Shown here: piece by piece, positions 1,911 to 27,180 of the stretch
Numbering within the stretch: position 1 is the first letter of the stretch
How the letters are laid out: every line of letters starts with the position of its first letter
IMG/VR virus record: IMGVR_UViG_3300024239_000011
Coordinates: 434,001-498,000 of that record
Strand: one strand, 5' to 3'
DNA length: 64,000 bases
Program-made: the position numbers and the translations under genes
The notes under the pieces: model-generated
What the model saw: only the letters and a program-made list of their open reading frames with translations
What the model was told of the DNA's origin: nothing
Databases searched by the model: none

Positions 1911-2795
1911 CTACGAATGATTGGGACGTATAAGTTCTCGGTACTTCCTAAGAACTAACTTTTGTTCATCAGTTAGGTTGGTTGGCACTGTAATTTCAAT
2001 ACACACATATAGGTCGCCACGTTCAGTATTTTTGAATTTCGGCAAACCCCGCCCTTTTACCCGAATACGCTGACTATTTTGTGTCCCTGCCGGGATTTTT
2101 ACACGTAAAACCGCACCATCAATTGATGTGAAAGTGATTTCCGATCCGAGTACGGCATCAATTGCGTCCAACTTAGTGGTCATCAACAAGTCCGCTTTAT
2201 CGCGGGTGAACTGTGGATGGGGACTAACGCGGATTGCGACGTAGAGATCAGCCGCCTGAACGTTCGGATCGCTCGATCCGCCCGCACCGGCATACTTGAT
2301 CTTCATACCGTCTTCGATACCCACCGGTATTTTGATGTGCGCAGTCTTCTTTCCCAGCCCTGGCACAACATAAGTCAGTTCTGTCTCTTTCCCCGCAAAC
2401 ACATCTTCAAGATTGATATGGTACGGAACTTCAATATCACGCGCTTTCCGCTGCTGTTCCGCATGGAAGGGGTTCTGCATATTGCGGAACAAATCCTCAA
2501 AAGGAAAATCCTGTCCGGGAGACGCCTTAAACCCAAACGGACCACCGAAGGGATCACCGAACGGCGCCCGCTGACCGGATGCGAATGACCGCTGCTGACT
2601 ATCATAGTCACGACGACGCTGTTGGTCTTTCAGCACATCATACGCAGCATTAATCTCTTTGAATTTCCGCTCGGCATCGGCATTACCAGGGTTCACATCA
2701 GGGTGATACTGCTGCGCAAGCTTACGGAAAGCTTTCTTGATCTCGTCATCGGTCGCAGTTTCAACAACCCCAAGCGTTTTGTAATGGTTTTCCAT
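1911..2795 (-). CDS. dnaJ: DnaJ/CbpA-type co-chaperone without zinc finger
   Basis: J domain YKTLGV...FRKLAQQYHPDVN, G/F-rich linker, C-terminal domain (GDLYV). Probable start MENHY at 2795. Confidence 0.92.
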   Translation of the reverse strand: MENHYKTLGVVETATDDEIKKAFRKLAQQYHPDVNPGNADAERKFKEINAAYDVLKDQQRRRDYDSQQRSFASGQRAPFGDPFGGPFGFKASPGQDFPFEDLFRNMQNPFHAEQQRKARDIEVPYHINLEDVFAGKETELTYVVPGLGKKTAHIKIPVGIEDGMKIKYAGAGGSSDPNVQAADLYVAIRVSPHPQFTRDKADLLMTTKLDAIDAVLGSEITFTSIDGAVLRVKIPAGTQNSQRIRVKGRGLPKFKNTERGDLYVCIEITVPTNLTDEQKLVLRKYRELIRPNHS

Positions 2796-2921
2796 GTCCC
2801 TCAACCAATCAGCAACAAAATAAAAAAAACAATGATTCCAATCGCGTATTTTAACGGAATCGTCCCATGACCCATACACAAAAATTCGTCATCATGGCAT
2901 CCGGCGCACTTATATTCACAA

Positions 2922-3644
2922 TCACACATTGTTTTCTCGCCGTCGTTTAGCGCGTCGTTTAGTTTCTTCAGCAGATTTCTCGCGATGGCATGCGACACAC
3001 TTGGTACCAATATTGTTCAGGTGCCATGCTTCAATGCGCCCGCGACTTTCACTCAACGGAACCAAGTGATCCATGTCCCAATTCCCATGAAGGCGCTCAT
3101 CCACTGTTCCACAAATATGACAGACCCCGCGATCACGCGCAAAAACTGCTTTTCGCTGTTTTGTAAGGTCATAAATCAAGTTGTATTGCTTAGCGCACTC
3201 GGGATGCCAGTGCATTCTTTTATTGATAGTACCATCTTCACGAAGAATAGGCTGACCACAGAACCGGCAATATCCACGTGGGGCGGTATGATACGACGGC
3301 GGTTTTGGGGGACGCCGATGATCACGCTGGGTAATTGCCTTGATAACTTTCTCGGGGGTTTTTCCTGTTGGCCACTTCTTATACAACGCACAAGTGAACC
3401 ATTGCCAATTCTCAACTTCACCAACATCCAATATGTACACAGCATCCATAACCATACGAACTACCTGTACCATTGGTTGCCAGGAATTCTTGGTATCGAT
3501 GTTCTCTACAAAGAACTCAAGCATGTCAGCAAATCGAGAATAAAACTTAAAGCTCAGCCCGTAGCTGTTGTATGTTTCGATCACATCTTGACCGAAATTC
3601 CAGGCATTTTTTCCAAAGTCTAAATTATAGAAATCGTGATCCAT
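2922..3644 (-). CDS. HNH endonuclease domain protein
   Basis: CRFCG...HPEC; VFARDRGVCHICG...DMDHLVPL...N...CVACHREKS. Confidence 0.8.
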   Translation of the reverse strand: MDHDFYNLDFGKNAWNFGQDVIETYNSYGLSFKFYSRFADMLEFFVENIDTKNSWQPMVQVVRMVMDAVYILDVGEVENWQWFTCALYKKWPTGKTPEKVIKAITQRDHRRPPKPPSYHTAPRGYCRFCGQPILREDGTINKRMHWHPECAKQYNLIYDLTKQRKAVFARDRGVCHICGTVDERLHGNWDMDHLVPLSESRGRIEAWHLNNIGTKCVACHREKSAEETKRRAKRRRENNV

Positions 3645-3997
3645 TACTGCTGTTTCGGTTTGGGTTCACCTTCTTTTAACACAGAACGGTAGTATTTGAT
3701 AATTTCTTGTTGTTCAAGAATGTATCGCCGTAGCTCTTGAACGTTCACTGATAGGTTCTCATAACCGTTATCAGTCAATGCGAAGATAACAATTTCTTCA
3801 TCTGTACTGGATGTTTCATCAAGCAACTTGATCAGTTGCTCTCGGTTATAAACCTGCCACTTCACCTCGCGCATCTGAACTTTACTAGGAAGTGGTGGGT
3901 GAATAATTTTCACCACTTCAGTATTGGTTACGACTGGCGGTGGCACATTTGTACATGCTGCCAGCAACACGGCAATAAATGGAACGAATCTTTTCAT
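3644..3997 (-). CDS. o-spanin (Rz1-like outer membrane lipoprotein)
   Basis: Lipobox LLAAC, Pro-rich segment, C-terminal coiled coil; overlaps the i-spanin candidate. Confidence 0.75.
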   Translation of the reverse strand: MKRFVPFIAVLLAACTNVPPPVVTNTEVVKIIHPPLPSKVQMREVKWQVYNREQLIKLLDETSSTDEEIVIFALTDNGYENLSVNVQELRRYILEQQEIIKYYRSVLKEGEPKPKQQ

Positions 3998-4460: not shown

Positions 4461-5450
4461 ATGCGCTCAAACAAATTCATAACCCCGGAAGTAATCGAGA
4501 TACCTCTTACTGCATCGTTTGGTACCATTTTGGTTGGACGCTATGCGTACTGGAATCCCCGCAAACAACACAGCTTCAAGCTTGGCGGGGTACAAGCAAC
4601 TCGGTTGATTGGGGAAGAAGTCGAAAAAGTAGCATCTCTATATCCGGGTTTTGACCGCGAAGATCGCTTTGTATGGCTCTCTAATCGCCCTGCTAAAACA
4701 GGCACCGCCTATAAAATCGATCTATCACGGCTCAATATTTTAGAATTGCGATCCCCCAAATGGACACCCGATGTCCTGTATCGAGGAAATATCCCGGCAA
4801 GCGCCATTGTTGGAACTATCCGCCCAGCGCCAATAACTGAATCCAAAGCAAACGACCACATAAAAGAAGTCGTCGGGATGATCCAGCGCGACTGCTCGGA
4901 TTTTCTTGGGGAATGGGACCATCAAACCCCACTTTTTATGGGTCTCCGTGGAGTAAAACCAAATCAACGTTTATTTCCTGACACTTCTCGTTTTATCTAT
5001 AGCTCAGTTGAACCACGAGAGCGCGGCGACGACATCACCGGTAAGCATTTTACCGCGATAATAGATGATGCGATGAAAAAAACCGGGTTTACGGCAACTC
5101 GGTTGAATTCTGTTCGGGTAACTGGCAACCTTGACTTAGCCCATATCGAAGGCGGGGTCTATGCGATCTTCCCGCTAAATGGGTATAATTTTTCATGGTC
5201 AACCATTGTTGGCGACTATGTACGGCATTTCGCGGACTCGCCCATATACCATGCCACCAGTTATCCCCGGACGAAATTCGGGCTGCAATTGAGGATCATG
5301 GATTACTGGAAGAGTATTGAAGGAAGCTACGCGACCACCGACATCAACGCAGCCATAGCGTCCGGTCATGAAATCCTGCTCGCAGGGTCCGGTTTCTATG
5401 GCATCCAGGCACACACGTTCGCTGAGATTGCCAAGAAGGGGCTTCTCTAA
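4461..5450 (+). CDS. Hypothetical two-domain protein, possible head-internal protein
   Basis: 329 aa ORF after a late motif; internal PITES protease-site-like linker; N domain weakly ART/KptA-like (FVWLS, YKIDLS, YRGNIP). Confidence 0.6.
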   Translation: MRSNKFITPEVIEIPLTASFGTILVGRYAYWNPRKQHSFKLGGVQATRLIGEEVEKVASLYPGFDREDRFVWLSNRPAKTGTAYKIDLSRLNILELRSPKWTPDVLYRGNIPASAIVGTIRPAPITESKANDHIKEVVGMIQRDCSDFLGEWDHQTPLFMGLRGVKPNQRLFPDTSRFIYSSVEPRERGDDITGKHFTAIIDDAMKKTGFTATRLNSVRVTGNLDLAHIEGGVYAIFPLNGYNFSWSTIVGDYVRHFADSPIYHATSYPRTKFGLQLRIMDYWKSIEGSYATTDINAAIASGHEILLAGSGFYGIQAHTFAEIAKKGLL

Positions 5451-6067
5451 GCGTTCTCGGAAATGCGGGGACTGTCCGGGTTCCAACTACCTGCATTGTA
5501 AACCGATTTGATGTTGCTTGGGTCAAATATCGCAACATTCATCTTTCCAACTTCGTTGGTCATGTACCCGTCGTACCCAAGGCGTTTCAACGCATTCTGG
5601 ATACGCGGTTGCTCTAATACCTTACAATTCCCTTTGGGAATGTATGTCTGGTACTCTTGAGCTTTCAACCGACCAACCATCGACCCATCGTTCATCACCC
5701 GGCGTATCGAAGGGTCACTAAAAAGTGCATTAAGGTCCGCTTCCTTGGACGGATCGAAAATACGCCCACGAAGATAGACCGGGTAGATAGCAGGCTGATT
5801 GCCCGATACGGCTTGACCGGCATAATTGGACGCATACTCAGGGTTCGTCGTGAAATAGATGGCAGGCGCTCGCTCTTTTTTCTTTAGCTCTTTACCGGTT
5901 CGAAACGCCGCAATGTCCTGCCCGGACCCGGTACCATGAAAGAATACTAGCGGTATGCCATGCTCATCCACCAGATTACTTTCACCAAACCACGCACGGA
6001 ATTTAGGGTCCGATAGGGGATTCCAATTTGCACGTTCGACTAGATTGATGAGGTGACGCATTTCCAT
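5447..6067 (-). CDS. ADP-ribosyltransferase-like protein (ART-PolyVal type)
   Basis: FRAWFGES.LVDE.G.PLVFFHGT, IYFTTNPEYASNYA, IYPVYL, GYDG, AIFDPSNIKS. TAAATA at 6073-6078. Confidence 0.75.
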   Translation of the reverse strand: MEMRHLINLVERANWNPLSDPKFRAWFGESNLVDEHGIPLVFFHGTGSGQDIAAFRTGKELKKKERAPAIYFTTNPEYASNYAGQAVSGNQPAIYPVYLRGRIFDPSKEADLNALFSDPSIRRVMNDGSMVGRLKAQEYQTYIPKGNCKVLEQPRIQNALKRLGYDGYMTNEVGKMNVAIFDPSNIKSVYNAGSWNPDSPRISENA

Positions 6068-6081
6068 GAAACTATTTAGCC

Positions 6082-6129
6082 GACAACAAGAACCCCCGCC
6101 AGTTCGCACCAGCGGGGGTTCTTGTTGTC
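6082..6129. terminator. Intrinsic terminator hairpin
   Basis: GACAACAAGAACCCCCGC...GCGGGGGTTCTTGTTGTC inverted repeat. Confidence 0.75.
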
Positions 6130-6192
6130 CCTTGGGAATGTGAAGGTGTCACCACCAACACCACGTTCACGTCCTACCCAAGGGCGCCCGTC

Positions 6193-6708
6193 TTAGAAAC
6201 TGTAACGGGTACCAACGGTCACGGCGTGGGTCTTGAAATCCCGCTCACCAGTTTCAGTACCGGTCACAGCTTCACTGTGGATGTAACGATACTCACCGAC
6301 CAATTCCCAGTTCTTAGTGAACTGATAGGAAGCACCGGTCGCCAGGATATACGCCCAATCATTCTTGTTGGAAACGCCTTCAACGGCATCATTGCTCAGC
6401 CACACATAGCCGACGCCAGCACCTACAAACGGGGTAATACCAGCAAACGTCACTGGCTCAACATAAGCCATACCCGAAACCATGTTGCCACGGAGAACAT
6501 CCGAACGCAGGTAGTCGTAGTCGCCTTCAAGACGGATCACACCGAAATCGTGACCAGCCTTCAGGTTGATATCCGACTGGTTCTTAATACCATCAAAATC
6601 ATTGAAAGCACCACCAACCGACAGACCAACGTAGTTCTTACCATCTTCAGCCAAAGCCGGGGTAGTGAACAGAAATGCAGCAGCAATAAAAGCAAGAATT
6701 TTCTTCAT
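6193..6708 (-). CDS. 8-stranded outer membrane beta-barrel protein (Omp25/RopB/OmpA-TM-like)
   Basis: Signal peptide MKKILAF...ALA, alternating beta strands, PFVGAGVG, C-terminal RYSF. Confidence 0.85.
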   Translation of the reverse strand: MKKILAFIAAAFLFTTPALAEDGKNYVGLSVGGAFNDFDGIKNQSDINLKAGHDFGVIRLEGDYDYLRSDVLRGNMVSGMAYVEPVTFAGITPFVGAGVGYVWLSNDAVEGVSNKNDWAYILATGASYQFTKNWELVGEYRYIHSEAVTGTETGERDFKTHAVTVGTRYSF

Positions 6709-6727
6709 ATGTTTCCTCATTAGAAAG

Positions 6728-6770
6728 AAAAACTGTGTGTTTATTTACCACGATAAACACACAGTTTTTT
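6728..6770. terminator. Terminator-like hairpin
   Basis: AAAAACTGTGTGTTTAT...ATAAACACACAGTTTTT. Confidence 0.65.
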
Positions 6771-6813
6771 ATTTGTAGTGGCACTAGATTACTTTAATAC
6801 CATACTGTTGTAA

Positions 6814-8457
6814 TTATATCACATACTCTACAAGCCAACGTGTTTCATCACTAGTGCCTTCGTAGGTGAATACCTTATTCCCATCCCCGCTAATGGTAAT
6901 GAATAATGCATCATCATAAGTTGCGGTGTGTTCCCACCCACTACCAGTATTTGTAAACAAATACGAGACCGGATTTGTTGGCGAACTCGTGGCTGTATAA
7001 GATTGAGATACAACCAATTTTGTACCATCGTCACTTAATTTCACATTTACACCAAACCTAGCATCTTGTACGGGAAGTGGATGCTCAATAACAATAGGCG
7101 TGCCCCACGAATTCCACCCAGTCCCTTTTTGATAAATGTACACGGCGCCAGCACTTGTAATACCACCAACCGCAGTATTACCATCGCCGACTGCCAACAC
7201 CGACCCATCCGCTGAGCATGAAATAGATGAGGCAACACGACTAATCGTCCCAACAGGGGTAGAACCGCCACCTTGCTGATAAATTTTAATTTGCGATCCA
7301 ACCAATGCAAAGAGGTACGAAATACCACCTACAAACGCCGTATCCATGTTATATGATTGCGATGTCGTATCCAACTGGTTCCACCCACTAGATGAACCAG
7401 TTGTCGTAGTAAAGGTAAGACCACCATTACATGACCCAAAAACAAAACCATCATTTTGAGAATGAACAATTGCACGATGCACTTTGTTTTGATCGGCATT
7501 ATTTGGTTGGTATACAGAACCGTCACTAGTCCGAATAACTAGATAAGATTTGTACTCCCACGTATTCAAATTTTGATATGAATAGGCATATGCGCCTAAT
7601 TCATTTCCTAACGAAAAAGCACCCAAACTTAAGTTACCAGAACTAGAGGTATACCCACCAACAACATTTGGAGTTTCAACCCAACCCGCCGATTTAACCC
7701 AATATCGCAACGAACGATAACCATTTGCATCGCTCCCAAGCTCACGATTAAACATTATCGCAGTTCCGTTGCGATTTGTCTGAATACCTTTGCCATCCGG
7801 TCCATATGTCCATGCATTAAAATTACTTTTCACAAATGTTGCAACAATAGTCGATCCATTTGTTACATCAATAGTAAACGCCTGATCTGCACTGGCAGCC
7901 TTACTATCAGTGGCTCTAATCGTAAAATTAGCCAATCCTGGCGTTGTAGGTATACCAGATAATTCACCAGTTGCAACATTAAGAGTTATCCCTGCGGGCA
8001 AACTACCGGCAGACACACTATAAGTTATAGTATCTCCATTGGGATCGATGGCAGACAATGCATAGTTAAATGTTGATCCAACAATTACCGTTCCCAAACC
8101 ACCATTGGTAGTGGTCCAAATTGGTGCATCATTCACAATAGTTAATGAAAATGCACGATCATTTGAAAACACACCGTCACTGGCTCTAACTGTAAAATTG
8201 TATACCCCAGGATTGTTTGTTGGCGTCCCAGTGATTTGATTGCTGCTAAGAGACATTCCATTGGGAAGTATACCGGAAAAAATGCTATAAGAAACCAATC
8301 CATTCTCAGGATCAATTGCATTTAACGTATATGTAAAAGGAACATTTGCAGAAATAGTCCCTAAGGAACCTGATATTGTATTCCAAATAGGTGGTAGATT
8401 ACTGGCAACTTTAAATAATCCAGTTGGATTTAAATTTCCTTTAAACAATATACCCAT
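6814..8457 (-). CDS. Virion protein with two putative Ig (He_PIG) repeats and a beta-propeller-like C terminus
   Basis: Repeats PIW.T..G.LGT....F.Y.L.AIDP...YS...G.LP.G..L...G.P; GAVYIY and FGVNVKLSDDG FG-GAP-like motifs. AT-rich; TATAAATA at 8492-8499. Confidence 0.75.
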   Translation of the reverse strand: MGILFKGNLNPTGLFKVASNLPPIWNTISGSLGTISANVPFTYTLNAIDPENGLVSYSIFSGILPNGMSLSSNQITGTPTNNPGVYNFTVRASDGVFSNDRAFSLTIVNDAPIWTTTNGGLGTVIVGSTFNYALSAIDPNGDTITYSVSAGSLPAGITLNVATGELSGIPTTPGLANFTIRATDSKAASADQAFTIDVTNGSTIVATFVKSNFNAWTYGPDGKGIQTNRNGTAIMFNRELGSDANGYRSLRYWVKSAGWVETPNVVGGYTSSSGNLSLGAFSLGNELGAYAYSYQNLNTWEYKSYLVIRTSDGSVYQPNNADQNKVHRAIVHSQNDGFVFGSCNGGLTFTTTTGSSSGWNQLDTTSQSYNMDTAFVGGISYLFALVGSQIKIYQQGGGSTPVGTISRVASSISCSADGSVLAVGDGNTAVGGITSAGAVYIYQKGTGWNSWGTPIVIEHPLPVQDARFGVNVKLSDDGTKLVVSQSYTATSSPTNPVSYLFTNTGSGWEHTATYDDALFITISGDGNKVFTYEGTSDETRWLVEYVI

Positions 8458-8502
8458 AGCACCACCTATTGTTTTGAACAGATTTATTTAGTATTTATAT
8501 CA

Positions 8503-9046
8503 GAACAACTTTAGGTTCTTGACCTAGATTGGAGGATCACCTTCCCCCTTTCGGAGGAAGAAGGTGATTGTTTTGACCTGAGTTGTCGGATTCATCAGAC
8601 GAGGAAATAGCAGTAGGCGGACTGGCGAGTTTCCTACCTTCCTCTTACCTTCCATGCCGAAATCGGCATCCAGTCGGGACCACGGGAGAACCCTGATGAT
8701 GATTCACCGTGGCTGCTCGTTGTGGTTAGTCACAGCGCGAGCATTCTTTCACCAACGCATAACGCGATCCTAAAAACGGAAATTATCGTTTCCATTTAAG
8801 CGTAAATTGACAAAGATAATGGGTATTGTATGTCAATGCGATTGGCTTACCATCAGCAGCACTGATGTGTCCTCTTTGTGGTCTGGCGGGCACCCTACTA
8901 GCCATCTGCGGCATTCGGATTTTTCCAGTCGAGCGAAGGGTGCGCTCTCATACCCCCGGTCAGTCGTCCCGGCAATTCTTGGGCGGTTTAATACAGAACC
9001 CTCTTAACGAGTCGGGACTGTATCCTTGACTACCTATACGAGTCAA
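8503..9046. ncRNA. Candidate large structured non-coding RNA (~540 nt)
   Basis: No credible ORF in a gene-dense genome; at least 12 tiled helices and a possible pseudoknot (see findings). Confidence 0.55.
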
Positions 9047-9047
9047 A

Positions 9048-9569
9048 TTACTTTCGTGCTTGTTTTGTTTCCTGTACCATTCCGGTAGGGATGCTTCCGC
9101 GTTTGATAAAGAAATCCAAGCGAGCGCCGGTTAGAGATGATGATTGATAATCAGACGAACCGGCACCGGTACGAATGTCAATGGTGATGGTCGTAAACGG
9201 CATTAATAGGACGCTATTGATTGCTCGCATCGCCTTGTGAGCATCGCGTTCTGACTTGGCTTCCAAGTTCAAGGCATGCTCGTTGTACTCGATGCGCACC
9301 CAGCCCAATTTGAGCAGTTCGAAGATTAGCTTATCGCTGTAGCCATTGAACGCGATGTCCGACACCACGTCGTCATCAACCACTTCTGGGTCGATGTCGA
9401 ACCGTTCGGCATTCTCCAACGCAAATTCTTGGTGTGATTTCTCGTCGTCTGACTTCCCAACGTAGGCAACGTCGTTGTCGTGGACGTTGAACCAATACTT
9501 CAGACCCCGACTTCCAAGAGCCGGTACGAAATCCATTAGACTTTCTGTAAGTATCTCATTAATGCGCAT
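9048..9569 (-). CDS. Hypothetical 'GWVR' family protein, putative head-internal
   Basis: MRINEILTE N terminus; paralogous to the N domain of 9608-10957. Confidence 0.75.
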   Translation of the reverse strand: MRINEILTESLMDFVPALGSRGLKYWFNVHDNDVAYVGKSDDEKSHQEFALENAERFDIDPEVVDDDVVSDIAFNGYSDKLIFELLKLGWVRIEYNEHALNLEAKSERDAHKAMRAINSVLLMPFTTITIDIRTGAGSSDYQSSSLTGARLDFFIKRGSIPTGMVQETKQARK

Positions 9570-9607: not shown

Positions 9608-10957
9608 ATGACCATACCCAGCCTTACCGACTATCTATGTGAGAACTCTTCGGAGCCGTTAACTGAACGGACGACTGAAATTCGTCTCTGGTACAACGTG
9701 AATACCGGGGAAGCGTTGGACACCAAGGGTAAAGATCATTTCGGGTTCGCGGCGGATAACGCCTCTTTGTTTGGTGTCGAGCATATTAATGTCGATGACG
9801 CAGACGTGGATGAAGACGGAGAAATGATCCCGCCTGACGACCGGTTGATGTCTACGGCATTTGCCAATGGCTGGGTCCGGATCAACATGAACGGTTGGGG
9901 TTTGCCCATCATCTGCACCGACCACCCCCGGAAGGCACAAAAGGCGCTCCGGTGGCTCGGGGATCGGCTTGAAGACCGGTCTGAGGTCATGATTGAACTC
10001 TACGCCGAAGGGCGGTGCCAATCGAAGACCTTGCGGGGCGAGGAAGTCTACCAGTTTGCCAAGGATGGGCGGCTATACGAAGCCGCTGCGCGGGGTCCAG
10101 AGGACTATTTCGCGGCAGGGGTGGTTGGTGATGCACGAGTCTGTGTAATCGAAGCCAGCGATCTCCGGACGCTGTGGGAGACATGTGTTCGCGCGGTTGA
10201 TCATGTGGATGAGGTTCGGTGGCACATTCCAGAGCGTGGGTTCGGAACTTTATTGGGTGATGAAATATCTCAATTCATCATGGTACCGGAGTTAGATATC
10301 CCCGCCACCCCATTCAAGTTACGTCGCTCCCTCAAGGAGAACGCGGGAAGCCCAGTAATTATTAATGCCATCAAGCAGTTGTTTGCTCAGTATATTGGGA
10401 CGACCAACCTCAATAATTTTTTTGGGAAACATCGCTGGGTAAATCTACCCGAAATGATGGGACGAAACGCAAAGGGCGGATCGACAGTGATTCGGCGGCA
10501 GCGTGTCGTTATGCAAGTTTCGCAGGAAGTTGTTGACTTCATTCATCGTTTCACTGGTCGAATTGAAGATACCGGGTGGTTTGTATCCGAAATTACCCCG
10601 AAGGATAATGGTTTCGACTTGGTACTAGATGCCACTCCTAACTTTGATGTTATGGGGACATTGTATCATCCAGTACCGTCAGAACAATTGGATGAAATCC
10701 GGCAGAGTGGTATTCAGCCTGAAGGTACCCCCGGTAAGATTTTATTGGGACGCACCCCTGCTGCTGCCCGCTTAATCGCTCTGCGCAAAGTCACACAGGG
10801 TGAATGGAGTGGTGATATCGCCATTATTGAGGTCAATACCAAGAAGGCGCACGTAAAGTTCTATCAGCACCCTGATTTTGCCAATTGTATGTTTGCGTAC
10901 CAGCCGATTTTTACCGGTGCCCTGCGCCATTCGCGAAAGAACGACTTGAAGCTATGA
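9608..10957 (+). CDS. Multidomain hypothetical protein (GWVR domain plus degenerate ART/KptA-like C domain)
   Basis: N domain aligns with 9048-9569; C terminus LYHPVP.E.LDEIRQSGIQP resembles the LYHGT...I...GL.P motif. Confidence 0.7.
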   Translation: MTIPSLTDYLCENSSEPLTERTTEIRLWYNVNTGEALDTKGKDHFGFAADNASLFGVEHINVDDADVDEDGEMIPPDDRLMSTAFANGWVRINMNGWGLPIICTDHPRKAQKALRWLGDRLEDRSEVMIELYAEGRCQSKTLRGEEVYQFAKDGRLYEAAARGPEDYFAAGVVGDARVCVIEASDLRTLWETCVRAVDHVDEVRWHIPERGFGTLLGDEISQFIMVPELDIPATPFKLRRSLKENAGSPVIINAIKQLFAQYIGTTNLNNFFGKHRWVNLPEMMGRNAKGGSTVIRRQRVVMQVSQEVVDFIHRFTGRIEDTGWFVSEITPKDNGFDLVLDATPNFDVMGTLYHPVPSEQLDEIRQSGIQPEGTPGKILLGRTPAAARLIALRKVTQGEWSGDIAIIEVNTKKAHVKFYQHPDFANCMFAYQPIFTGALRHSRKNDLKL

Positions 10958-16700: not shown

Positions 16701-18242
16701 TTAATCGTGACCCGCTTCGTAGCGATGCACCATTTGGTCGTCGGCGTCCCGGCTGTCCAAAACGACTTTGTATCCCCACAGGCGGCTTATATGCTTGAGA
16801 ACTTCCTGGGTGTTCTGTTCATCCAGTGGAATGTCGTCACACATGCGATGATGCAGAACTAGAGTACGGCTACCGCGTAGATTGGCAGCCATCACCTGAA
16901 TGTCGGGTTCCAGGCGCGACACGTTGTATTGGCGCGAGAAAGCCCGACGAATATCTCGAAAACCACTGCCATTGTGGATATGGGTAACATCATATTCATC
17001 TGCATCCTCATCGTCATGCACAAGAAACAACTTCCGCTTCCGCATGACGGTGGGTGAAAGATATTGGAGGATGAAACTTTCGTCGCGATAGTTGGTAACC
17101 GCATCCAGCAGTACCGCCCGCCAATCCAGATTGCCCGCAAAATCAAACCATTCACGGTCTTCATCGGTGGGATTTTCACAGATGCGCTTGATGTCCTGCA
17201 TCATGTCGAAGCCAATGGCATACGGGTTGAAGCCACCATAGCGCGGATCATCGAAATCGGGCTGGAAGACCACGTTGGTGTGGCTCTGGGTGAATTCCAT
17301 CCAGGCACCATCGGTGATCATGCCCTTGTCCCAGAGACGGTTCATGATGTAGTGGTGGACAAAGGTAGCGAAACCTTCATTCATCACCTTGGTCTGTTTT
17401 TGCGGGTAGAAATACTGGCTGATCTTGCGGACAATGCGGATGATCTCGCGCTGCCATGCTTTCAGGGTCGGGCTGTTCTTCTCAAGGAAGTACAGGATGT
17501 TCTCTTCCGGCAGCCGGGCACGCCCACGCAGAGTGTCAGATTCGTCTTTCTCGTCCGCCGTGTCAGCAACCGGACCTTGCGGCACGGTGCGCCACAGATC
17601 GTTGAACGACCGCTCTTCGTATTCCTGCTGCGCCTTGACCCGCTCGCGCTCGCGTTCTGCGCTCAGCTTCTCGGGGCGATGATAGCGATCAACGCCGTGT
17701 GACATCAGGGCGTGGGCAGAATCCAGCAGGGCTTCCACTTCATCAAACCCATACCGTTGTTCGCAGTGGTTGATGTAGTCCTTCGCAAATGCAAGGTAGT
17801 CGAGGATGCCATCAGCATCCGTCCACTGCTTGAACAGATAGTTGTTGGCAAAGAAGTGGTTGTGCCCGAACGCAGCGTGTGCCATCACCAGAGCTTGCAT
17901 GGTCATCGTGTTCTCTTCCATGCAGTAGCTAATGCATGGATTCGAGTTGATCACGATTTCATAAGCAAGACCTTGACGCCCCTTGCGGTAATTCGTCTCG
18001 TCTCTGGCAAAATGCTTGCCAAATGACCAGTGCTGGTACATCAGGGGCATGCCGATGGACGAATAAGCGTCCAACATTTGCTCGGCGCTGATGATCTCGA
18101 TCTGATTTCGATACGGTTTCAGCCCGAGATCATTGATGGCGATGTCTTCGATGGCGTCGTAAGTGCGTTTAAGGGTGTCAAAATCCCATTCAGCACCTTC
18201 AAACAGCGGCTTGACCAACTTACCACGAGGCTTCCGCGCCAT
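16701..18242 (-). CDS. spoVR: SpoVR family protein (YcgB)
   Basis: HWSFGK, GLAYEIVINSNPC, AHAAFGHNHFF, YFYPQKQTKVMNEG. Confidence 0.95.
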   Translation of the reverse strand: MARKPRGKLVKPLFEGAEWDFDTLKRTYDAIEDIAINDLGLKPYRNQIEIISAEQMLDAYSSIGMPLMYQHWSFGKHFARDETNYRKGRQGLAYEIVINSNPCISYCMEENTMTMQALVMAHAAFGHNHFFANNYLFKQWTDADGILDYLAFAKDYINHCEQRYGFDEVEALLDSAHALMSHGVDRYHRPEKLSAERERERVKAQQEYEERSFNDLWRTVPQGPVADTADEKDESDTLRGRARLPEENILYFLEKNSPTLKAWQREIIRIVRKISQYFYPQKQTKVMNEGFATFVHHYIMNRLWDKGMITDGAWMEFTQSHTNVVFQPDFDDPRYGGFNPYAIGFDMMQDIKRICENPTDEDREWFDFAGNLDWRAVLLDAVTNYRDESFILQYLSPTVMRKRKLFLVHDDEDADEYDVTHIHNGSGFRDIRRAFSRQYNVSRLEPDIQVMAANLRGSRTLVLHHRMCDDIPLDEQNTQEVLKHISRLWGYKVVLDSRDADDQMVHRYEAGHD

Positions 18243-18321
18243 TATTTCGCTCCATTACTAACGACCATAACTTGGTCGCAAATTACAGTCAAACGTGTGG
18301 TTTTGTCCACCCATACCGCTA

Positions 18322-19609
18322 TTATGCTTCCTTTTTAAATAGTTCCCGGAAGACAGGGAAAATTTGGTTTGCTGCTCGAATCTTGCGCATTTGGAATTTA
18401 TCCCACCGATCATTAATCGGCTTGTAGGTACGCCATAGATCGGTTTCGCTATTTCCCCAATTTTTGTATTCGTGACCCACTTCAATGAAGGCGTAATACT
18501 GGACGATTGGTAGAATTTTTTCGTTGAGCAAATTTTGGCAGTACGTATTGTCCGACGACACGTTATCGCCATCCGACGCTTGCGCGGCGTAGATGTTCCA
18601 CTGATCCAGGGGATACCGCTCGCGGATGACTTTATCCATCAATTCCAGCGAGGTGGATACCACGGTGCCGCCAGTTTCGGTGTCGTAGAAGAAGGTTTCT
18701 TCATCGACCTCCTTTGCTTCATGGGTGTGACGAATAAACACCACGTCGATACGCTGATACTGACGACGTAGGAAAAGATAGAGCAACATGAAGAACCGCT
18801 TCGCGAGGTCTTTCATGTGTTCGGTCATCGATCCCGATACGTCCATCAGACAGAACATCACCGCTTGTGTTGCCGGGAGGGGATGCTTGACATGAAGGTT
18901 GTACCGCACGTCCACCGGGTCCACAAATGGTACCGATTTCATACGACGCCGAATCGTTTGAACTTCCAAATGGAGTTCAGTCAACCGGTCGGTTTCTTCG
19001 GTAGTGCGCGGAGTTTTGGTTTCCAAGCGGAAGATTTCCGCCTCCAATTCCTTCAATTCTGCCGTCTTCGGACGGCGCAATGCAATCCGGCGACCAACCG
19101 CATTACGCATGGTCTGACGAATGTTCAAATTGCTTGGATTGCCTACGGTTGTGTAGCCACCACGTCGATACTCATATGAGATTGACTGCCGCAATTGCTT
19201 CTTGACCATATCGGGCAGTTCCAAATCCTCAAAGAAAATATCGAGGAATTCGCTGCTGTTAAGCACAAACTGAAAGTCATCCTGCCCTTCGCCGTCCGGG
19301 GAACCTTCGTTCCCTTGACCACCGCCCCGGCGGGATTTGGGGATAGTGTCGCCGGGGACATATTCCTTGTTGCCAGGAACGACGCGATCATGCCGACCAC
19401 CTTCGCCATGGACAATATGCGGCTCGCGGATGCCCTTGCTGGGGATGACAATTTTCCCCTTGGTATTGGCGATATCCTTGATATCGGTTTCGCCAATATG
19501 TTTCTTCACGGCTTCCTTGATTTGCTCTTTCGCCCGGCGAATGAAACGCTGCCGATTAACAAGGCTTTTGCCCTGCGGGTTTTTGCGGCGGTCGATAATG
19601 TCCAGCATA
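18322..19609 (-). CDS. yeaH: YeaH/YhbH (DUF444) vWA-like protein
   Basis: IIDRRKNPQGKSLVNRQRF, PGNKEY, AVMFCLMDVSGSM, ETGGTVVS, QASDGDN. Confidence 0.95.
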
Positions 19610-19891
19610 TCAAATGATCCCAATCCCAATTGTGATGGTTTTGATACCGTCGTTCTTAGCGCGGCACTGAAATTCTGCGACCAGACCACCGCGTTCTTCT
19701 CGAACAAATACCGTGTAATTGGAAATTTTGCGTTTCCACTTCAACATTTCACCCACTCGTGAAAGTCCTGCCTCAACCCCCGCCACCATTGCTAGTGATG
19801 GGGGATCGAAGCTAAAAGGCTCGACTTCTGCCCGAATTGCTTCGGTTAGGTCGAGTTCACCGATGGTGGTGGCACCGGAGAACGAGATCAC
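19610..19891 (-). CDS. Hypothetical protein
   Basis: 93 aa ORF filling the gap between the endonuclease and yeaH. Confidence 0.5.
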   Translation of the reverse strand: MISFSGATTIGELDLTEAIRAEVEPFSFDPPSLAMVAGVEAGLSRVGEMLKWKRKISNYTVFVREERGGLVAEFQCRAKNDGIKTITIGIGII

Positions 19892-19919
19892 GAGAAAAGT
19901 TCCAAACTAATATCGATCA

Positions 19920-20624
19920 TCATACACCCTTTGAAATAGTGCGCCCAGGATACCAACCTTCGCCAACCAAGTCTAACTCAGAAATATGGATTCGTTTGTT
20001 TTCGGTTCCGTTGGTTATCCATTTCCACTCACGTTTTTTCTCGGCACCTTTCTTATGACCTAACAACATTGCTTCAGTAGGTTCATTATGTCTGGCTTTT
20101 ACGGACTCCGCGATTTTCTCTCGCCATTCATCCGTCTTACCCTTGCCCTTCCGAACCTCTGACATTTTCTCCCGTACTTCATCAGGGAGGTTTTTACCGC
20201 GCCAACCTGAACCTATTCGGTGCCGCACATCATCGGCAAGGTCGTAGGTTTTACCTTTTCGCGGCGATGGGCGTCCTTTTTGTACCTTGCTTATTTTCTC
20301 TCGCGTTTCCGGTGATACGTCAGTGAGAACCGCTTGCTGAAGTATGTTATACTCTGGTTGTAATGTATCCAAGTAATGCTGTTCACGCTCAACTAATATT
20401 TTTTGATCACAGGCGGTTAATTCGGTTATTTCAAAGACAAATGCATCTTCACCATATTTGTTCCAAGCATTTTGAAGATGTTTATTGTGATGTTTACCTT
20501 TACGTAGTTCGCAGCGGTGTTCGGAAAATCGTCGTGTTATATCTTTACTTGAGCCGACATACCGTTTTCCGTTCTTTGTATTCCTAATCTGGTAAACACC
20601 TGATCGTTTTATATGCTGTGCCAT
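19920..20624 (-). mobile_element. Free-standing GIY-YIG homing endonuclease with NUMOD3 repeats
   Basis: SGVYQIRN...YVGSS, REQHYLD, ETREKIS/EVREKMS repeats; AT-rich insert within the prkA operon. Confidence 0.9.
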
Positions 20625-20749
20625 CTAGTCCCCGATGATAAACAGGTTATTACACCTATTTATCATCGGAGTTAAATGGAGTACGCGAATGCCCTTTTAT
20701 GCACACGCATATACCATTCTACTAAATGGTGAGATTGGTCGGAGTACGA

Positions 20750-22693: not shown

Positions 22694-22931
22694 TTCTCGA
22701 TCCTTGTCCGATTCCACCACCAAGGAACATCAATTCGATGCCCCAATACGATATAGCCACAAGAGCAATAGCCTGTCACTAAGTTTTGGGCCAAAGCGCG
22801 ATTTGATACCGCGCTCTCTGTGGCGATCCCGGTGAAAATATGCATACCCCAAGTCCATGGTGTTTGACTACGAATAAATTGAAGATTCGTTTATGGTTGT
22901 GATAGGACGTATCAAACGACAGGAGACAGTC

Positions 22932-24458: not shown

Positions 24459-24490
24459 AAAAAAGGCGCTGGTGAAACCAGCGCCTTCTT
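24459..24490 (-). terminator. Terminator of the ancestral DUF932 gene
   Basis: AAAAAAGGCGCTGGT...ACCAGCGCCTT. Confidence 0.7.
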
Positions 24491-24673: not shown

Positions 24674-25567
24674 ATGTTTACAGCCGTAGATAGAACTCCA
24701 TATACATATCATATTTGTTGGACTAATTATGATGTTCATTACTATGGAATACGATGGGCCAAAGGATGTAGTCCACAAGAACTTTGGTCAAAATACTTTA
24801 CATCGTCTTCGAGCGTGCATAATTTTAGAGCAATTTATGGTGATCCTGATGTTGTTGAGGTGCGTCGAATTTTCGATGATATTACAAAAGCCCGTTTATG
24901 GGAGAATACTGTTCTGCGACGCCTGAAGGTCATCTACCGTGATAAATGGCTGAATAAAACTGACAACATATCTATTGCGCCAGAATGTTGCCGAAGTGCG
25001 TTTGGTAAACCTGCTCTTAATCGAGATACTTCAATCTACCGTTTTTTCCATCCCGAATATGGTCAGCGCGAATATACACGCCATCAATGGATGGTAGAGT
25101 TCCCCTCCTTAAATTCGACCACCGTTTGTATGTTGATACGGGGGCGAGTAAAACAACATCAGGATTGGGTTCTGGGCACCGATGAAGATTATCTTCGTGT
25201 AATGGCGGAAACGCATCAAAGTCGTAGCGCGGCTGCATCAACCCGTATACGTACTAATGAAAGTAATCGGAAACGAAGTGCTACACTAAAAGGTCGGTTA
25301 ATAACCGAAGAACATGCGCAAAAAATAAGTCAATCAAAACGTGGGATAAGGCAAAGTGATAAGACACGTATGAAGTTAAGAGATAAAAAACGCCAAGATA
25401 GTAGAATCTTTAAATTCTACTGTGATGGTCGTGAAATTTTTCATGGTACAAAATATGAATTTTTCGATCAATTCAAAAATGATTATGATTTGAAAAAAGG
25501 TGGTTTTAATTATCTTATCGCAGGGATTTGGTTGACATATAAAGGAATAACAAGCGAAGTGGTCTAG
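24674..25567 (+). mobile_element. Free-standing Seg-like (GIY-YIG variant) homing endonuclease
   Basis: PYTY....YYGIR...YFTSS, WE..VL, WLN; NUMOD3-like EEHAQKIS/KTRMKL; AT-rich. Confidence 0.8.
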
Positions 25568-25580
25568 ACCACTTCGCTTG
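25551..25580. terminator. 30 bp perfect palindrome between convergent genes
   Basis: CAAGCGAAGTGGTCTAGACCACTTCGCTTG. Confidence 0.6.
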
Positions 25581-25589
25581 TTATTGGTG

Positions 25590-26684: not shown

Positions 26685-26844
26685 GATGTCCTCCTAAATT
26701 ACGTCACCAAATTTATCGTGACGCGCCTAGATTGTCAACCCATCATTTTCGTTGCCAAATTTAGACGTGTTTAACAGACAATCATCCCAAATAGCAAAGC
26801 ATAAATACCTCTAACGGCATGGTTACCTTAGAGGTTCTTTAGTC

Positions 26845-27015
26845 ATGATAGATAAAGCTGACAAGCTTGAGCAGCTTTTCGCGAGCAAAACCAAAGAGAA
26901 GGAAATCCGCGAAAAGAACCCAATAGTTAAGCAGGCGTGGGAACGCTACCAAGAGGTACTTGAGCTTTACATGAAAGCTGATACCCCTCGGCGCGCAAAG
27001 GAAGCCACTGCGTAA
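26845..27015 (+). CDS. Small hypothetical protein (56 aa)
   Basis: MIDKADKLE...REKNPIVKQAWERYQ; preceded by TAAATA and a GAGG SD. Confidence 0.65.
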   Translation: MIDKADKLEQLFASKTKEKEIREKNPIVKQAWERYQEVLELYMKADTPRRAKEATA

Positions 27016-27180
27016 TTATTGTTACGAATTTTCTTACTTTAGAAACCCGTATGGATCAACACAATAACTGGCACACCGTTTCTTGACATTATGTTGTAAA
27101 TTGATATGTCAATACTGTGGGCAGACAACCCAGATTGAGCATAGTTTACTAAACCGTCAATTGCTTTGGTGGTCTGGTTA

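What the first reader, a model, noticed from the sequence alone, without database searches (positions are those of the whole stretch)
8503..9046. ~540 nt non-coding block tiled with helices: candidate novel large structured RNA
Seen: one of the largest gene-free stretches in the window, more GC-rich than the gene on its left, with consecutive pairings. These are 8505-8515/8576-8586 (one bulge), 8536-8544/8560-8568 (CC-GAAA-GG tetraloop on the minus strand), 8601-8606/8639-8644 with inner 8613-8617/8633-8637, 8654-8659/8664-8669, 8680-8685/8707-8712, 8714-8719/8738-8743, 8778-8782/8789-8793, 8806-8812/8831-8837, 8851-8856/8862-8867, 8890-8896/8937-8943, 8966-8971/9013-9018 and 9026-9031/9041-9046. 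Loop GACTGG (8620-8625) can pseudoknot with CCAGTC (8670-8675 or 8925-8930), and AGTCGGGAC occurs twice (8672, 9010), allowing alternative folds. The block starts at the stop of late gene 9048-9569 and ends at the next TATAAATA. I recognise no tRNA, tmRNA, RNase P or intron core. Inference: a late-expressed multi-domain RNA (ribozyme, packaging or anti-defence RNA), or a structured ssDNA origin. G-U evidence is mixed, so the strand is unresolved.
Basis: partly seen in the sequence, partly recalled or inferred. Interest (0 to 1): 0.85.

Follow-up and report, generated by a model that had tools for sequence, protein, structure and literature searches.

The report
New pseudoknotted RNA-like element, huge phage
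The 540-base gene-free block is one of two diverged copies, in a roughly 870-kb phage genome, of a non-coding element matching no described RNA family, and its helices and two pseudoknots are kept by matching double mutations, so it is very probably a folded functional RNA of unknown job.

Summary
The block 8503-9046 is real, non-coding and has no Rfam match. Judged on its own it looks ordinary. Its folding z-scores (-1.8 and -2.5) lie within the genome background (-0.9 +/- 1.4), and only one hairpin stands out.

The decisive evidence came from a second copy. An exact-pattern scan found a paralogue (Y, locus L019) on the other contig of the same ~870-kb phage genome. X and Y share conserved blocks, an 83-nt stretch that is 100% identical (8923-9005), and copy-specific insertions.

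In the 5' part (8535-8743), eight helices are kept by 16 double (compensatory) substitutions and no one-sided ones:
- Slid-partner controls give 0-1 double changes; column-permuted alignments give 0.15 covarying stems against 5 found.
- Between samples, the element varies about eight times less than the spacer next to it.
- All five variants avoid breaking pairs. One (A-U to G-U) favours the window + strand.

The right half (8750-9046) has no comparative support for structure.

Both copies sit just upstream of the late promoter of an Ig-like virion gene, but in opposite orientation. They are inverted relative to each other and lie ~444 kb apart. Function, transcription and strand remain unproven.

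Verdict: a new structured nucleic-acid element, most likely an RNA. The family so far has two members in one genome.

The parts
8503..9046 (+). Whole element X, one of two paralogous copies. The other copy is Y, at L019 11806-11300 on the L019 minus strand.
   Evidence: Colinear homology blocks with Y. The left limit abuts the late-promoter unit of the Ig-like gene. The right limit abuts the stop codon of gene 9048-9569. The strand is tentative: it rests on one invariant U.G pair and one population A-U to G-U change.
8535..8569 (+). P1 hairpin, with outer stem 8537-8544/8560-8567. Y carries a 33-nt insertion at the tip.
   Evidence: This is the only locally significant fold (z -4.1). Eight bp are shared with Y, with two C-G to U-A double changes. 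The Y population SNP 11795 A>G gives a G-U pair. The U-tract after the stem is present in X only, so this is not a conserved terminator.
8592..8598 (+). PK2 5' strand (UCAUCAG). It pairs with 8693-8699, which lies in the loop of P5.
   Evidence: Seven bp are paired in both copies with three double changes; Y reads UCUACAC/GUGUAGA.
8601..8644 (+). P2 (8601-8606/8639-8644), enclosing P3 (8613-8617/8633-8637).
   Evidence: P3 reads GUAGG/CCUAC in X and AUGGG/CCCAU in Y, which is two double changes. P2 is present in independent folds of both copies, but the alignment register is ambiguous: one double change and two broken cells.
8620..8625 (+). PK1 5' strand (GACUGG, in the loop of P3). It pairs with 8670-8675 (CCAGUC).
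Evidence: Y reads GAUGAU/AUCAUC, so four of six pairs changed on both sides and all remain paired.
8654..8669 (+). P4 hairpin (AUGCCG AAAU CGGCAU).
   Evidence: The hairpin is shorter in Y. Three bp are shared, with one double change.
8670..8681 (+). PK1 3' strand (8670-8675) followed by the invariant junction UCGGGACC (8674-8681).
   Evidence: The invariant CGGGAC could pair with GUCCCG of the core (8966-8971). Both sides are invariant, so this cannot be tested.
8680..8712 (+). P5 hairpin (8680-8684/8708-8712). Its loop holds the PK2 3' strand, 8693-8699.
   Evidence: CCACG/CGUGG in X and CCGCA/UGCGG in Y, which is two double changes.
8714..8743 (+). P6 hairpin (8714-8720/8737-8743 and 8721-8724/8731-8734).
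   Evidence: 92% identical to Y, with one C-G to U-A double change and an invariant U.G pair. The Y SNP 11566 lies in its apical loop.
8750..8922 (+). Variable region with copy-specific hairpins (8778-8793, 8806-8837, 8851-8867).
Evidence: It aligns poorly with Y and is about 80 nt shorter there; Y has its own 9-bp hairpin. Folding z-scores range from about -1.5 to +1.1, positive only from about 8800.
8923..9005 (+). Invariant 83-nt core, 100% identical in X and Y.
   Evidence: Alone it folds no better than shuffles (z +0.7 and +0.95). It explains why the k=31 Logan contigs end at 8952 and start at 8976.
9026..9046 (+). 3' hairpin (UUGACU...AGUCAA).
   Evidence: Y has a hairpin at the aligned place (ACUCG UCAUG CGAGU), but the register differs, so the support is weak.
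8492..8499 (-). Flanking feature, not part of the element: the late promoter TATAAATA of gene 6814-8457.
   Evidence: Four of the five exact TATAAATA copies in the window lie 33-47 nt upstream of a gene start in the right orientation, and the fifth about 137 nt upstream. All four Ig-like paralogues carry (TA/C)TAAATA before the ATG.
6814..8457 (-). Flanking gene: a 547-aa protein with He_PIG Ig domains and FG-GAP-like repeats. Its start lies 45 nt from the left end of X.
   Evidence: Pfam match. Homologues carry FG-GAP_2. Its N-terminal 199 aa are 49% identical to the gene next to Y.
9048..9569 (-). Flanking gene: a 173-aa protein. It corresponds to the C-terminal half of a gene that is fused in a relative.

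Best explanation
Window 8503-9046 (X) is one of two paralogous copies of a non-coding element of about 0.5 kb that matches no described RNA family, in a phage genome of about 870 kb. It most likely acts as a folded RNA, tentatively the window + strand.

Shown:
- A second copy, Y, lies ~444 kb away in the same genome, inverted relative to X.
- The 5' ~210 nt of X form a terminal hairpin (P1) followed by a compact ~150-nt domain (8592-8743) of five helices and two pseudoknots.
- All of these helices are kept between X and Y by double substitutions, while the junction sequences (GGCGGA, CGAGUUUCC, UCGGGACC) stay invariant.
- A variable region follows, then an 83-nt stretch identical in both copies, then a weak 3' hairpin.
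- Within the phage population the element varies far less than the neighbouring spacer, and no variant breaks a pair.

Inferred:
- The element is transcribed on its own rather than serving the neighbouring gene. It lies next to the late promoter of an Ig-like virion gene in both loci, but in opposite orientation, and two further paralogues of that gene lack it.
- It therefore acts in trans as a self-folding RNA. It could be a scaffold, a ribozyme or a partner of a protein, in the manner of the large 'ornate' RNAs of phages and bacteria.
- The poorly structured invariant core would be the part that contacts a partner. Alternatively it was recently homogenised by gene conversion.

What the RNA does is not known.
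For: 1. Non-coding and unmatched. There is no coding signal and no ORF with a ribosome-binding site. Ten stop-free pieces have no Pfam or PHROG match. There is no Rfam match for X or Y and no tRNA or tmRNA.

2. Paralogue Y. It was found by a pattern scan and its blocks are colinear with X.

3. Folds. Independent MFE folds of X and Y give the same hairpin layout.

4. Covariation.
- On alignment A7, 44 pairs show 14 double changes, no one-sided changes, and 96.5% of cells paired.
- Partners slid by 1-3 columns give 0-1 double changes, and 0 of 500 shuffles reach the observed values.
- P1 adds two more double changes.
- An unbiased scan for stems paired in both copies with at least two double changes finds 5, against 0.15 expected (maximum 2 in 200 column permutations).
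- If the sites changed independently, 4.5 double and 19 one-sided changes would be expected.

5. Population data. Y has 4 SNPs in 507 nt, against about 15 events in the adjacent 228-nt spacer (Fisher p = 2e-5). The SNPs fall in loops or a bulge, or turn A-U into G-U. The single variable site in X, 8745, is unpaired.

6. Independence from neighbours. X and Y have opposite orientation relative to the Ig-like genes. The Ig-like paralogues at L023 and L024 have no element beside them.
Against: - There are only two copies, both in one genome. No third copy turned up in 139 kb searched with a covariance model, nor in exact-pattern scans of IMG/VR and GTDB genomes. Standard covariation statistics such as R-scape therefore cannot be applied.
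- There are no expression data, and no recognisable promoter or conserved terminator for either strand.
- Single-sequence thermodynamics are unremarkable.
- Every X-Y double change is Watson-Crick to Watson-Crick, and the consensus energies of the two strands are equal (-33.0 against -32.85). The strand, and even the choice between RNA and DNA, rests on one U.G pair and one SNP.
- The 83-nt identity may be mere gene conversion.
- The right half has no structural support.
- PK2 was found by a scan that looked for covariation, so it carries a selection bias.
Confidence: 0.57

Rival explanations
1. The element works at the DNA level. Its hairpins would form in single-stranded or cruciform DNA, or the two copies would act as inverted repeats for recombination. 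Possible roles are a replication origin, a packaging or recombination site, or a means of flipping the genome between two isomers.
For: - All 16 double changes go from one Watson-Crick pair to another, with no G-U intermediates between X and Y.
- Both strands fold equally well.
- Placement does not depend on the orientation of neighbouring genes.
- X and Y are inverted relative to each other and ~444 kb apart on an 869.6-kb genome, about 51% of the circle.
- An 83-nt perfect repeat is a good substrate for homologous recombination.
Against: - Two loop-to-strand pseudoknots and invariant junctions are typical of RNA tertiary folds, not of known DNA sites.
- One population variant gives G-U, which is tolerated in RNA on the + strand.
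- GC skew shows no origin-like turn beyond what the switch in gene strand explains.
- There are no iterons and no AT-rich unwinding block inside the element.
- Six assemblies all show one orientation and no isomer junctions.
Confidence: 0.15
2. The element is a cis-acting leader or regulatory region for the adjacent late Ig-like virion genes.
For: Both copies lie within 45-70 nt of the start of a paralogous He_PIG gene, right next to its late promoter. In the Y locus the + orientation runs the same way as all neighbouring genes.
Against: - Orientation relative to the gene is opposite in the two loci.
- The promoter lies between the element and the gene.
- Two other paralogues, with the same promoter type, have no such element.
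- X and Y are far more alike than the adjacent genes, which are 49% identical at the protein level. The two copies therefore did not simply arise as part of a duplication of the genes.
Confidence: 0.1
3. The element is a non-autonomous mobile or copied module. It might descend from an insertion sequence or an intron, with a hairpin at each end, and it landed twice in opposite orientations.
For: - There are two copies with unrelated outer flanks and opposite orientation.
- Each copy has a hairpin at both ends.
- The locus around X was rearranged: a gene that is fused in a relative is split here, with its halves on opposite strands flanking 5447-9569.
- The closest relative found has no counterpart of X downstream of the fused gene.
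Against: - No transposase, TnpB or IscB, reverse transcriptase or recombinase lies nearby.
- There are no terminal inverted repeats and no target duplication shared by both copies.
- Rfam intron, HEARO and IS605 models do not match.
- There are only two copies.
- Mobility would not by itself explain selection for the internal pseudoknotted fold.
Confidence: 0.1
4. The block is an ordinary spacer or 3' UTR with one terminator-like hairpin, and the other helices arise by chance.
For: Its z-scores lie within the genome background, and other gaps fold better: 35934-36394 has z -5.7 and 26685-27180 has z -4.3. The phage places strong hairpins between transcription units.
Against: The covariation with Y, the invariant blocks, and an eight-fold lower polymorphism than the neighbouring spacer all argue against it.
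Confidence: 0.04
5. The block is a decayed gene, or it encodes a small protein across the invariant core.
For: One reading frame is open through the core in both copies. Four codons just upstream (CGIR) differ only by three synonymous changes, and each copy has a CPxC motif. The locus is rearranged.
Against: - The coding score is negative and there is no ribosome-binding site.
- Y has no ATG in that frame.
- Stops occur in all frames across the covarying 5' domain.
- The pieces have no Pfam or PHROG hits.
- There is no match to neighbouring paralogues by tblastn or HMM.
- The stop codons are of mixed type, so recoding is excluded.
Confidence: 0.04

Closest known systems
Large 'ornate' non-coding RNAs of bacteria and phages (GOLLD, ROOL, also OLE and raiA)
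   Same: It is several hundred nucleotides long and non-coding, with many helices and pseudoknots, conserved junctions and variable inserts. It is carried by a phage and its function is unknown. GOLLD and ROOL occur in phages and prophages and fold without protein (bioRxiv 10.1101/2024.12.08.627333; PMC5737381).
   Different: - It does not match the Rfam models of these families.
- It is not next to tRNA genes.
- Only two copies are known, in one genome.
- Multimer formation is untested.
- Only ~210 nt are shown to be structured.
phi29 packaging RNA (pRNA)
   Same: It is a phage-encoded structured RNA whose loop-loop pairs covary. In phi29 these pairs hold a ring of RNAs together (from my own knowledge). 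Here PK1 and PK2 have entirely different sequences in X and Y, as if each copy had its own pairing code. Y lies 3-4 kb from the terminase genes.
   Different: There is no sequence or model match. The element is about three times longer. Here the pairs can form within one molecule. X is not near packaging genes. No experiment has been done.
ColE1 RNA II and T4 origin transcripts
   Same: RNA II is a transcript of ~550 nt whose fold decides whether it primes DNA synthesis (from my own knowledge). Here there are two copies, about half a genome apart.
   Different: There is no promoter or unwinding element, no antisense partner and no GC-skew signal. Nothing here tests R-loop formation.
Guide RNAs of transposon nucleases (omega RNA, HEARO, IS605-orfB) and IS110 bridge RNA
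   Same: These are structured non-coding RNAs of 150-400 nt that sit at the edge of a mobile unit, with an exposed sequence segment.
   Different: They always adjoin their nuclease or recombinase gene. None is present within several kb of X or Y, and the Rfam models do not match.

Membership tests
GOLLD (Rfam) / ROOL (Rfam) | Match to the family covariance model at or near the gathering score | tested here: not met
   The whole window at the gathering threshold gave 0 hits. X and Y with permissive filters at E<=10 gave only chance-level hits to unrelated families.
GOLLD (Rfam) / ROOL (Rfam) | Frequent location beside tRNA genes in phage or prophage DNA | tested here: not met
   There are no tRNA or tmRNA genes in the 64-kb window.
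Intrinsic (rho-independent) terminator, considered for hairpin 8535-8568 | A G+C-rich stem followed directly by a U-tract on the transcribed strand, conserved in homologues | tested here: not met
   X has UUGUUUUG after the stem on the + strand only. Y keeps the stem, with two compensatory changes, but has no U-tract on either strand.
Group I / group II introns | Match to the intron core models, with flanking exons of an interrupted gene | tested here: not met
   There is no Rfam hit. The flanking genes are complete and lie in different arrangements at the two loci.
Omega RNA / HEARO / IS605-orfB / IS110 bridge RNA | An adjacent gene for TnpB, IscB or an IS110 recombinase | tested here: not met
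   Pfam, NCBIfam and PHROG scans of the neighbours of X and Y show none. The rest of the 870-kb genome could not be scanned.
Diversity-generating retroelement (template/variable repeat pair) | Two near-identical repeats that differ at adenines, one inside the 3' end of a target gene, with a reverse transcriptase nearby | tested here: not met
   The 83-nt repeats are 100% identical, and both lie in non-coding DNA upstream of genes. No reverse transcriptase is among the neighbours.
Invertible DNA switch (inverton) | Flanking inverted repeats, and both orientations present in the population | tested here: not met
   No flanking inverted repeats were found. Six independent assemblies all carry X in one orientation. 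Raw reads were not examined.
Riboswitch / cis-regulatory leader | Lies in the 5' UTR, in sense orientation, of the gene it controls | tested here: not met
   The late promoter sits between the element and the gene, and the element is antisense to the gene in the window locus.
Conserved structured RNA (general criterion) | Helices kept by compensatory substitutions beyond chance | tested here: met
   There are 16 double changes in 8 helices and no one-sided changes. Controls give 0-1 double changes (slid partners) and 0.15 covarying stems (permuted columns). Only two sequences are available, so R-scape-type statistics cannot be applied.
Conserved structured RNA (general criterion) | A discrete transcript of the predicted strand | not testable with these tools

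The most novel reading that the evidence does not exclude
X and Y are the founding members of a new class of large self-folding RNA in huge phages. Each would have a double-pseudoknot 5' domain whose two pseudoknots carry copy-specific 'codes', plus an exposed 83-nt segment that is identical in both copies and engages a common partner. They would be made independently of the neighbouring late virion genes and act in trans, as a ribozyme, an assembly or packaging scaffold, or a decoy against host defence. Their inverted placement about half a genome apart could additionally tie them to replication or to genome isomerisation.
Probability: 0.35. Interest if true: 0.85.

Novelty: categorically new. 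Interest (0 to 1): 0.72.

Why it matters
Large, intricately folded RNAs are rare, and each new class (RNase P, group I and II introns, OLE, GOLLD, ROOL) has opened new biochemistry. Huge phages are almost unexplored for non-coding RNA.

Here a ~150-nt double-pseudoknot domain with invariant junctions is backed by 14 compensatory changes, plus two more in the hairpin P1 beside it. It sits in a phage genome of ~870 kb. That is larger than any published phage genome that I recall, and I did not check this.

The element is small enough to transcribe, probe and image directly, so the question 'what do big phages use structured RNAs for?' becomes testable.

The caveat is that the family has only two members, in one genome. 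Its reach and function are unknown.

Tried and rejected
- **Known RNA families.** Rfam at the gathering threshold and at E<=10 found nothing for X or Y. ARAGORN found nothing.
- **Hidden gene.** I checked six-frame translation and stop types; the stops are of mixed type, so no recoding. The codon and 3-periodic Markov models showed no coding signal. Pfam and PHROGs on ten stop-free pieces gave nothing.
- **Decayed paralogue of the neighbouring 173-aa/449-aa family.** A weak tblastn hit (E 0.63) was not confirmed by BLASTP (E 0.09) or by an HMM.
- **Repeats in the window.** There is no second copy within the 64 kb.
- **Origin of replication.** GC skew turns only where the gene strand switches.
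- **Synteny route.** The flanking proteins have no close relatives in 5.8 billion proteins or in IMG/VR. Remote homologues of the 173-aa protein led to loci L014-L017, none of which has anything like X.
- **Other assemblies of the same phage.** They are at least 99.9% identical and gave only one variable site in X.
- **DNA similarity searches.** blastn against GenBank phages and PLSDB plasmids found nothing.
- **More copies.** Three exact or degenerate pattern scans of IMG/VR and two of GTDB genomes returned only X and Y. Covariance model R1 found no third copy in 139 kb. Two further Ig-like paralogues lack the element.
- **Strand.** Consensus folding energy gave no difference between the strands.
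Full report
**1. What is at 8503-9046**

The window is part of IMG/VR contig UViG_3300024239_000011, which is 543 kb long; window position 1 is about contig position 434,001.

The stretch 8458-9047 lies between two minus-strand genes:
- Gene 6814-8457 encodes a 547-aa protein with He_PIG Ig domains and FG-GAP-like repeats.
- Gene 9048-9569 encodes a 173-aa protein.

An exact TATAAATA lies at 8492-8499 on the minus strand, 35 nt before the 547-aa gene. All five exact copies of this motif in the window lie upstream of a gene start in the right orientation, four of them within 33-47 nt.

No ORF in the gap looks coding:
- The best of six frames scores -0.098 per codon in a 3-periodic Markov model trained on 46 genes of the window. 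Shuffled sequence gives -0.11 +/- 0.03 and real genes give +0.127 +/- 0.055.
- No ORF has a ribosome-binding site.
- The stop codons are of mixed type in every frame, so stop-codon recoding is excluded.
- Ten pieces of 34-77 aa have no Pfam or PHROG match even at E<=10, apart from one chance-level hit.
- Three gene callers also left the gap empty.

**2.

The statistics are weak, however:
- The MFE z-score is -1.8 on the + strand and -2.5 on the - strand.
- Twenty-four random 544-nt windows of the same genome average -0.87 +/- 1.4.
- Other true gaps fold better: 35934-36394 has z about -5.7 and 26685-27180 has z -4.3.
- In a 100-nt sliding scan only the hairpin at 8535-8568 stands out (z -4.1), and 8800-9000 folds worse than shuffles.

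Rfam has no match at the gathering threshold or at E<=10, and there is no tRNA or tmRNA. At this point the finding looked like a long spacer with one hairpin.

**3. Looking for relatives**

- The flanking proteins have no close relatives in IMG/VR or in the 5.8-billion-protein collection.
- Six other assemblies of the same phage are at least 99.9% identical. They show a single variable site in the block, 8745 T/C.
- Two contigs from the Logan collection (assemblies of public sequencing runs, built with k=31) end at 8952, and another starts at 8976.

To look for alleles across that break, I scanned the metagenome contigs for the two flanks of the break joined by a gap of 0-30 nt. The scan hit a second contig of the same metagenome, Ga0247724_1000002, which is 326,607 nt long.

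The lengths 543,035 and 326,607 add up to the 869,618-nt ENA contig that carries both loci. Both pieces therefore belong to one genome of about 870 kb. The shared piece is an 83-nt perfect repeat (window 8923-9005), and this explains the breaks in the k=31 contigs.

**4. A paralogous copy (Y)**

L019 11806-11300, read on its minus strand, is colinear with window 8528-9047 read on its plus strand. The matching blocks are:

| Window (X) | L019 (Y) | Identity |
|---|---|---|
| 8535-8549 | 11799-11785 | 87% (15 nt) |
| 8626-8640 | 11667-11653 | 87% (15 nt) |
| 8711-8749 | 11583-11545 | 92% |
| 8923-9005 | 11453-11371 | 100% |

Between the blocks lie indels and copy-specific sequence. Homology starts at about 8503, directly after the promoter unit of the Ig-like gene, and ends at about 9046.

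**5. Covariation**

X and Y were folded separately, and the 5' domain gives the same layout of hairpins in both.

I first mapped the single-sequence MFE structure of X onto the X/Y alignment. Of 48 pairs, 25 were unchanged, 7 were changed on both sides and still paired, 3 showed wobble-compatible one-sided changes, and 11 were broken. The broken pairs were almost all in two places where the alignment is ambiguous.

I then scanned the whole alignment, without using any prior model, for stems of at least 5 bp that pair in both copies and carry at least two double changes. This found five, against 0.15 expected (maximum 2 in 200 column permutations):

| Stem | Window coordinates | X | Y | Double changes |
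|---|---|---|---|---|
| P3 | 8613-8617/8633-8637 | GUAGG/CCUAC | AUGGG/CCCAU | 2 |
| P5 | 8680-8684/8708-8712 | CCACG/CGUGG | CCGCA/UGCGG | 2 |
| PK2 (new long-range pairing) | 8592-8598/8693-8699 | UCAUCAG/CUGAUGA | UCUACAC/GUGUAGA | 3 |
| Doubtful | 8788-8792/9014-9018 | GUUUC/GGGAC | GGAAC/GUUCC | 3 |

The last stem lies in badly aligned sequence and I do not rely on it.

With P2, P4 and P6 added, the model for 8592-8743 has 44 pairs. Fourteen carry double changes, none carries a one-sided change, and 96.5% of cells are paired. Partners slid by 1-3 columns give 0-1 double changes, and 0 of 500 shuffles reach the observed values. If the sites changed independently at the observed rate, 4.5 double and 19 one-sided changes would be expected.

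P1 (8537-8544/8560-8567) adds two more C-G to U-A changes, and Y carries a 33-nt insertion at its tip.

Between the helices, GGCGGA, CGAGUUUCC, UCGGGACC and most of P6 are invariant. Covarying stems combined with fixed junctions are the usual signature of a functional fold.

Two caveats apply. Only two sequences are available, and PK2 was found by a search that rewards covariation.

**6. Variation within the population**

I compared Y between two samples (L019 and L027). The AT-rich spacer upstream of the element (228 nt) has about 15 substitutions and indels. The 507-nt element has four SNPs (Fisher p = 2e-5).

The four SNPs fall as follows:
- one in the apical loop of P6;
- one in the loop of a Y-specific hairpin;
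- one in a bulge;
- one in P1, where A-U becomes G-U.

The P1 change keeps a pair only if the RNA is the window + strand. The one variable site in X (8745) is unpaired.

**7. The right half**

- 8750-8922 aligns poorly with Y and is about 80 nt shorter there. Each copy has its own hairpins.
- The 83-nt identical core folds no better than shuffles on either strand (z +0.7 and +0.95).
- One reading frame is open through the core in both copies. Four codons just upstream differ only by synonymous changes. However, Y has no ATG in that frame and the coding score is negative, so I rate a peptide as unlikely.
- The perfect identity may reflect strong constraint or a recent gene-conversion tract. I cannot tell which.

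**8. Context**

Y lies between a 132-aa gene and a 439-aa gene (He_PIG plus a LamG-type lectin domain). The first 199 residues of the 439-aa protein are 49% identical to the 547-aa protein next to X. The genome has at least four such paralogues. Each has a (TA/C)TAAATA late promoter about 35 nt before the ATG, but only two have the element.

In both loci the element abuts that promoter, but in opposite orientation. In Y the window-plus sense reads towards the gene. In X it reads away from the gene.

On the ENA contig both genes are on the same strand, at 346.1 kb and 790.8 kb. X and Y are therefore inverted relative to each other and ~444 kb apart, about 51% of the genome.

No reverse transcriptase, TnpB or IscB, recombinase or other obvious RNA partner is encoded next to either copy. 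No promoter or conserved terminator for the element itself was recognised.

The locus around X is rearranged. In a distant relative (L014), one 471-aa gene follows the spanin pair. Here its N-terminal part is gene 4461-5450 on the + strand (40% identity, E 2e-85), and its C-terminal part is gene 9048-9569 on the - strand (41% identity, E 2e-33). The two parts flank 5447-9569, which fits an inversion of that segment. The relative has only a 60-nt spacer where X would be.

**9. Interpretation**

I conclude that the block is a real, conserved, folded non-coding element. I judge that about 85% likely.

That it acts as RNA rests on the pseudoknots, the fixed junctions and one G-U variant; I put this at about 65-70%. 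The strand is tentative (+, about 60%). Because the element's orientation relative to its neighbours differs between the loci, and two paralogous genes do without it, I favour an independently made, trans-acting RNA over a leader for the Ig-like genes.

The rivals are a DNA-level role, a copied or mobile module, a small peptide, and a chance spacer. Each is weighed in its own section of this report. What the element does is unknown.

**10. Comparison with known families**

By size, complexity, phage carriage and lack of known function, the element resembles the large ornate RNAs GOLLD and ROOL (bioRxiv 10.1101/2024.12.08.627333; PMC5737381). It fails their membership tests: there is no model match and no tRNA neighbourhood.

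It also fails the tests for introns, transposon guide RNAs, diversity-generating retroelements, invertons, terminators and riboswitch-type leaders (see the membership table).

I therefore file it as a new family. Its kind cannot be named until its function is known, and for now the family has two members in a single genome.

Noticed in passing
whole contig; L008, L019, L026: The phage genome appears to be about 870 kb. One ENA contig of 869,618 nt carries both loci. The two JGI contigs (543,035 and 326,607 nt) add up to that length within 24 nt. It has a T4-type terminase, spanins and TATAAATA late promoters. I recall no published phage genome this large, but I did not check.
   Followed up: partly
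window 4461-5450 (+) and 9048-9569 (-); L014 1216-2631: A gene that is a single 471-aa ORF in a distant relative is split here into a 329-aa ORF and a 173-aa ORF on opposite strands. The two ORFs flank 5447-9569, which fits a ~4.1-kb inversion carrying the ART-PolyVal, OMP and Ig-like genes and element X. Both halves keep the junction motif (EIAKKGLL and EILTESLM).
   Followed up: partly
window 9048-9569 (-) and 9608-9990 (+); proteins P0033-P0045: The 173-aa protein defines a domain family not found in Pfam. Its conserved motifs are W.NV, H, GWVR, DA.KA, IDIR and YF.KRG. A paralogue forms the N-terminus of the divergent 449-aa neighbour. Elsewhere the domain stands alone or is fused to cytidylyltransferase-like or SAM-lyase-like domains.
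   Followed up: partly
window 6814-8457; L019 9915-11234; L023 2501-3724; L024 2501-4444: There are at least four paralogous late genes. They share an N-terminal pair of He_PIG Ig domains (49-54% identity) but have different C-terminal binding domains, including FG-GAP-like repeats and a LamG lectin. Each has a (TA/C)TAAATA promoter. This looks like a family of exchangeable virion adhesins.
   Followed up: partly
window 35934-36394 and 26685-27180: These gene-free gaps fold much better than shuffles (z about -5.7 to -6.3, and -4.3). The first contains several perfect hairpins. Neither has an Rfam match at the gathering threshold.
   Followed up: partly
window 25546-25585, 37269-37304, 6082-6129, 6728-6769, 24460-24490: Perfect or near-perfect hairpins of 14-20 bp lie between genes. 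Some carry A and T runs on both sides, so they are probably bidirectional terminators bracketing single-gene units.
   Followed up: no
L019 2610-7613: The large terminase gene appears to be split. An N-terminal ATPase ORF (6702-7613) and a C-terminal nuclease ORF with weak intein-like signal (2610-3722) are separated by two DUF7487 ORFs, one of which has a Mom-like region. This may be an intein, an intron or a homing insertion.
   Followed up: no
L019 12029-11807 compared with L027: The AT-rich spacer upstream of copy Y is hypervariable between samples (about 15 substitutions or indels in 228 nt). The rest of the genome differs by less than 0.1%.
   Followed up: partly
window 16701-22723: The phage carries a PrkA-type kinase gene (20750-22723) and a SpoVR-like gene (16701-18242), with a 461-aa ORF between them. 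In bacteria this set of genes is linked to stress and sporulation.
   Followed up: no
window 6600-8530: The 547-aa gene and its promoter region have a GC content of 0.31-0.42, against about 0.50 on both sides. This suggests a cassette of different origin.
   Followed up: no
window 9047-9060; L019 about 11286-11275: The sequence ATTAC(T/C)TTCG occurs just past the 3' end of the element in both copies. In X it lies inside the end of the 173-aa gene; in Y it lies directly before the late promoter. It could be chance or the true end of the element.
   Followed up: no
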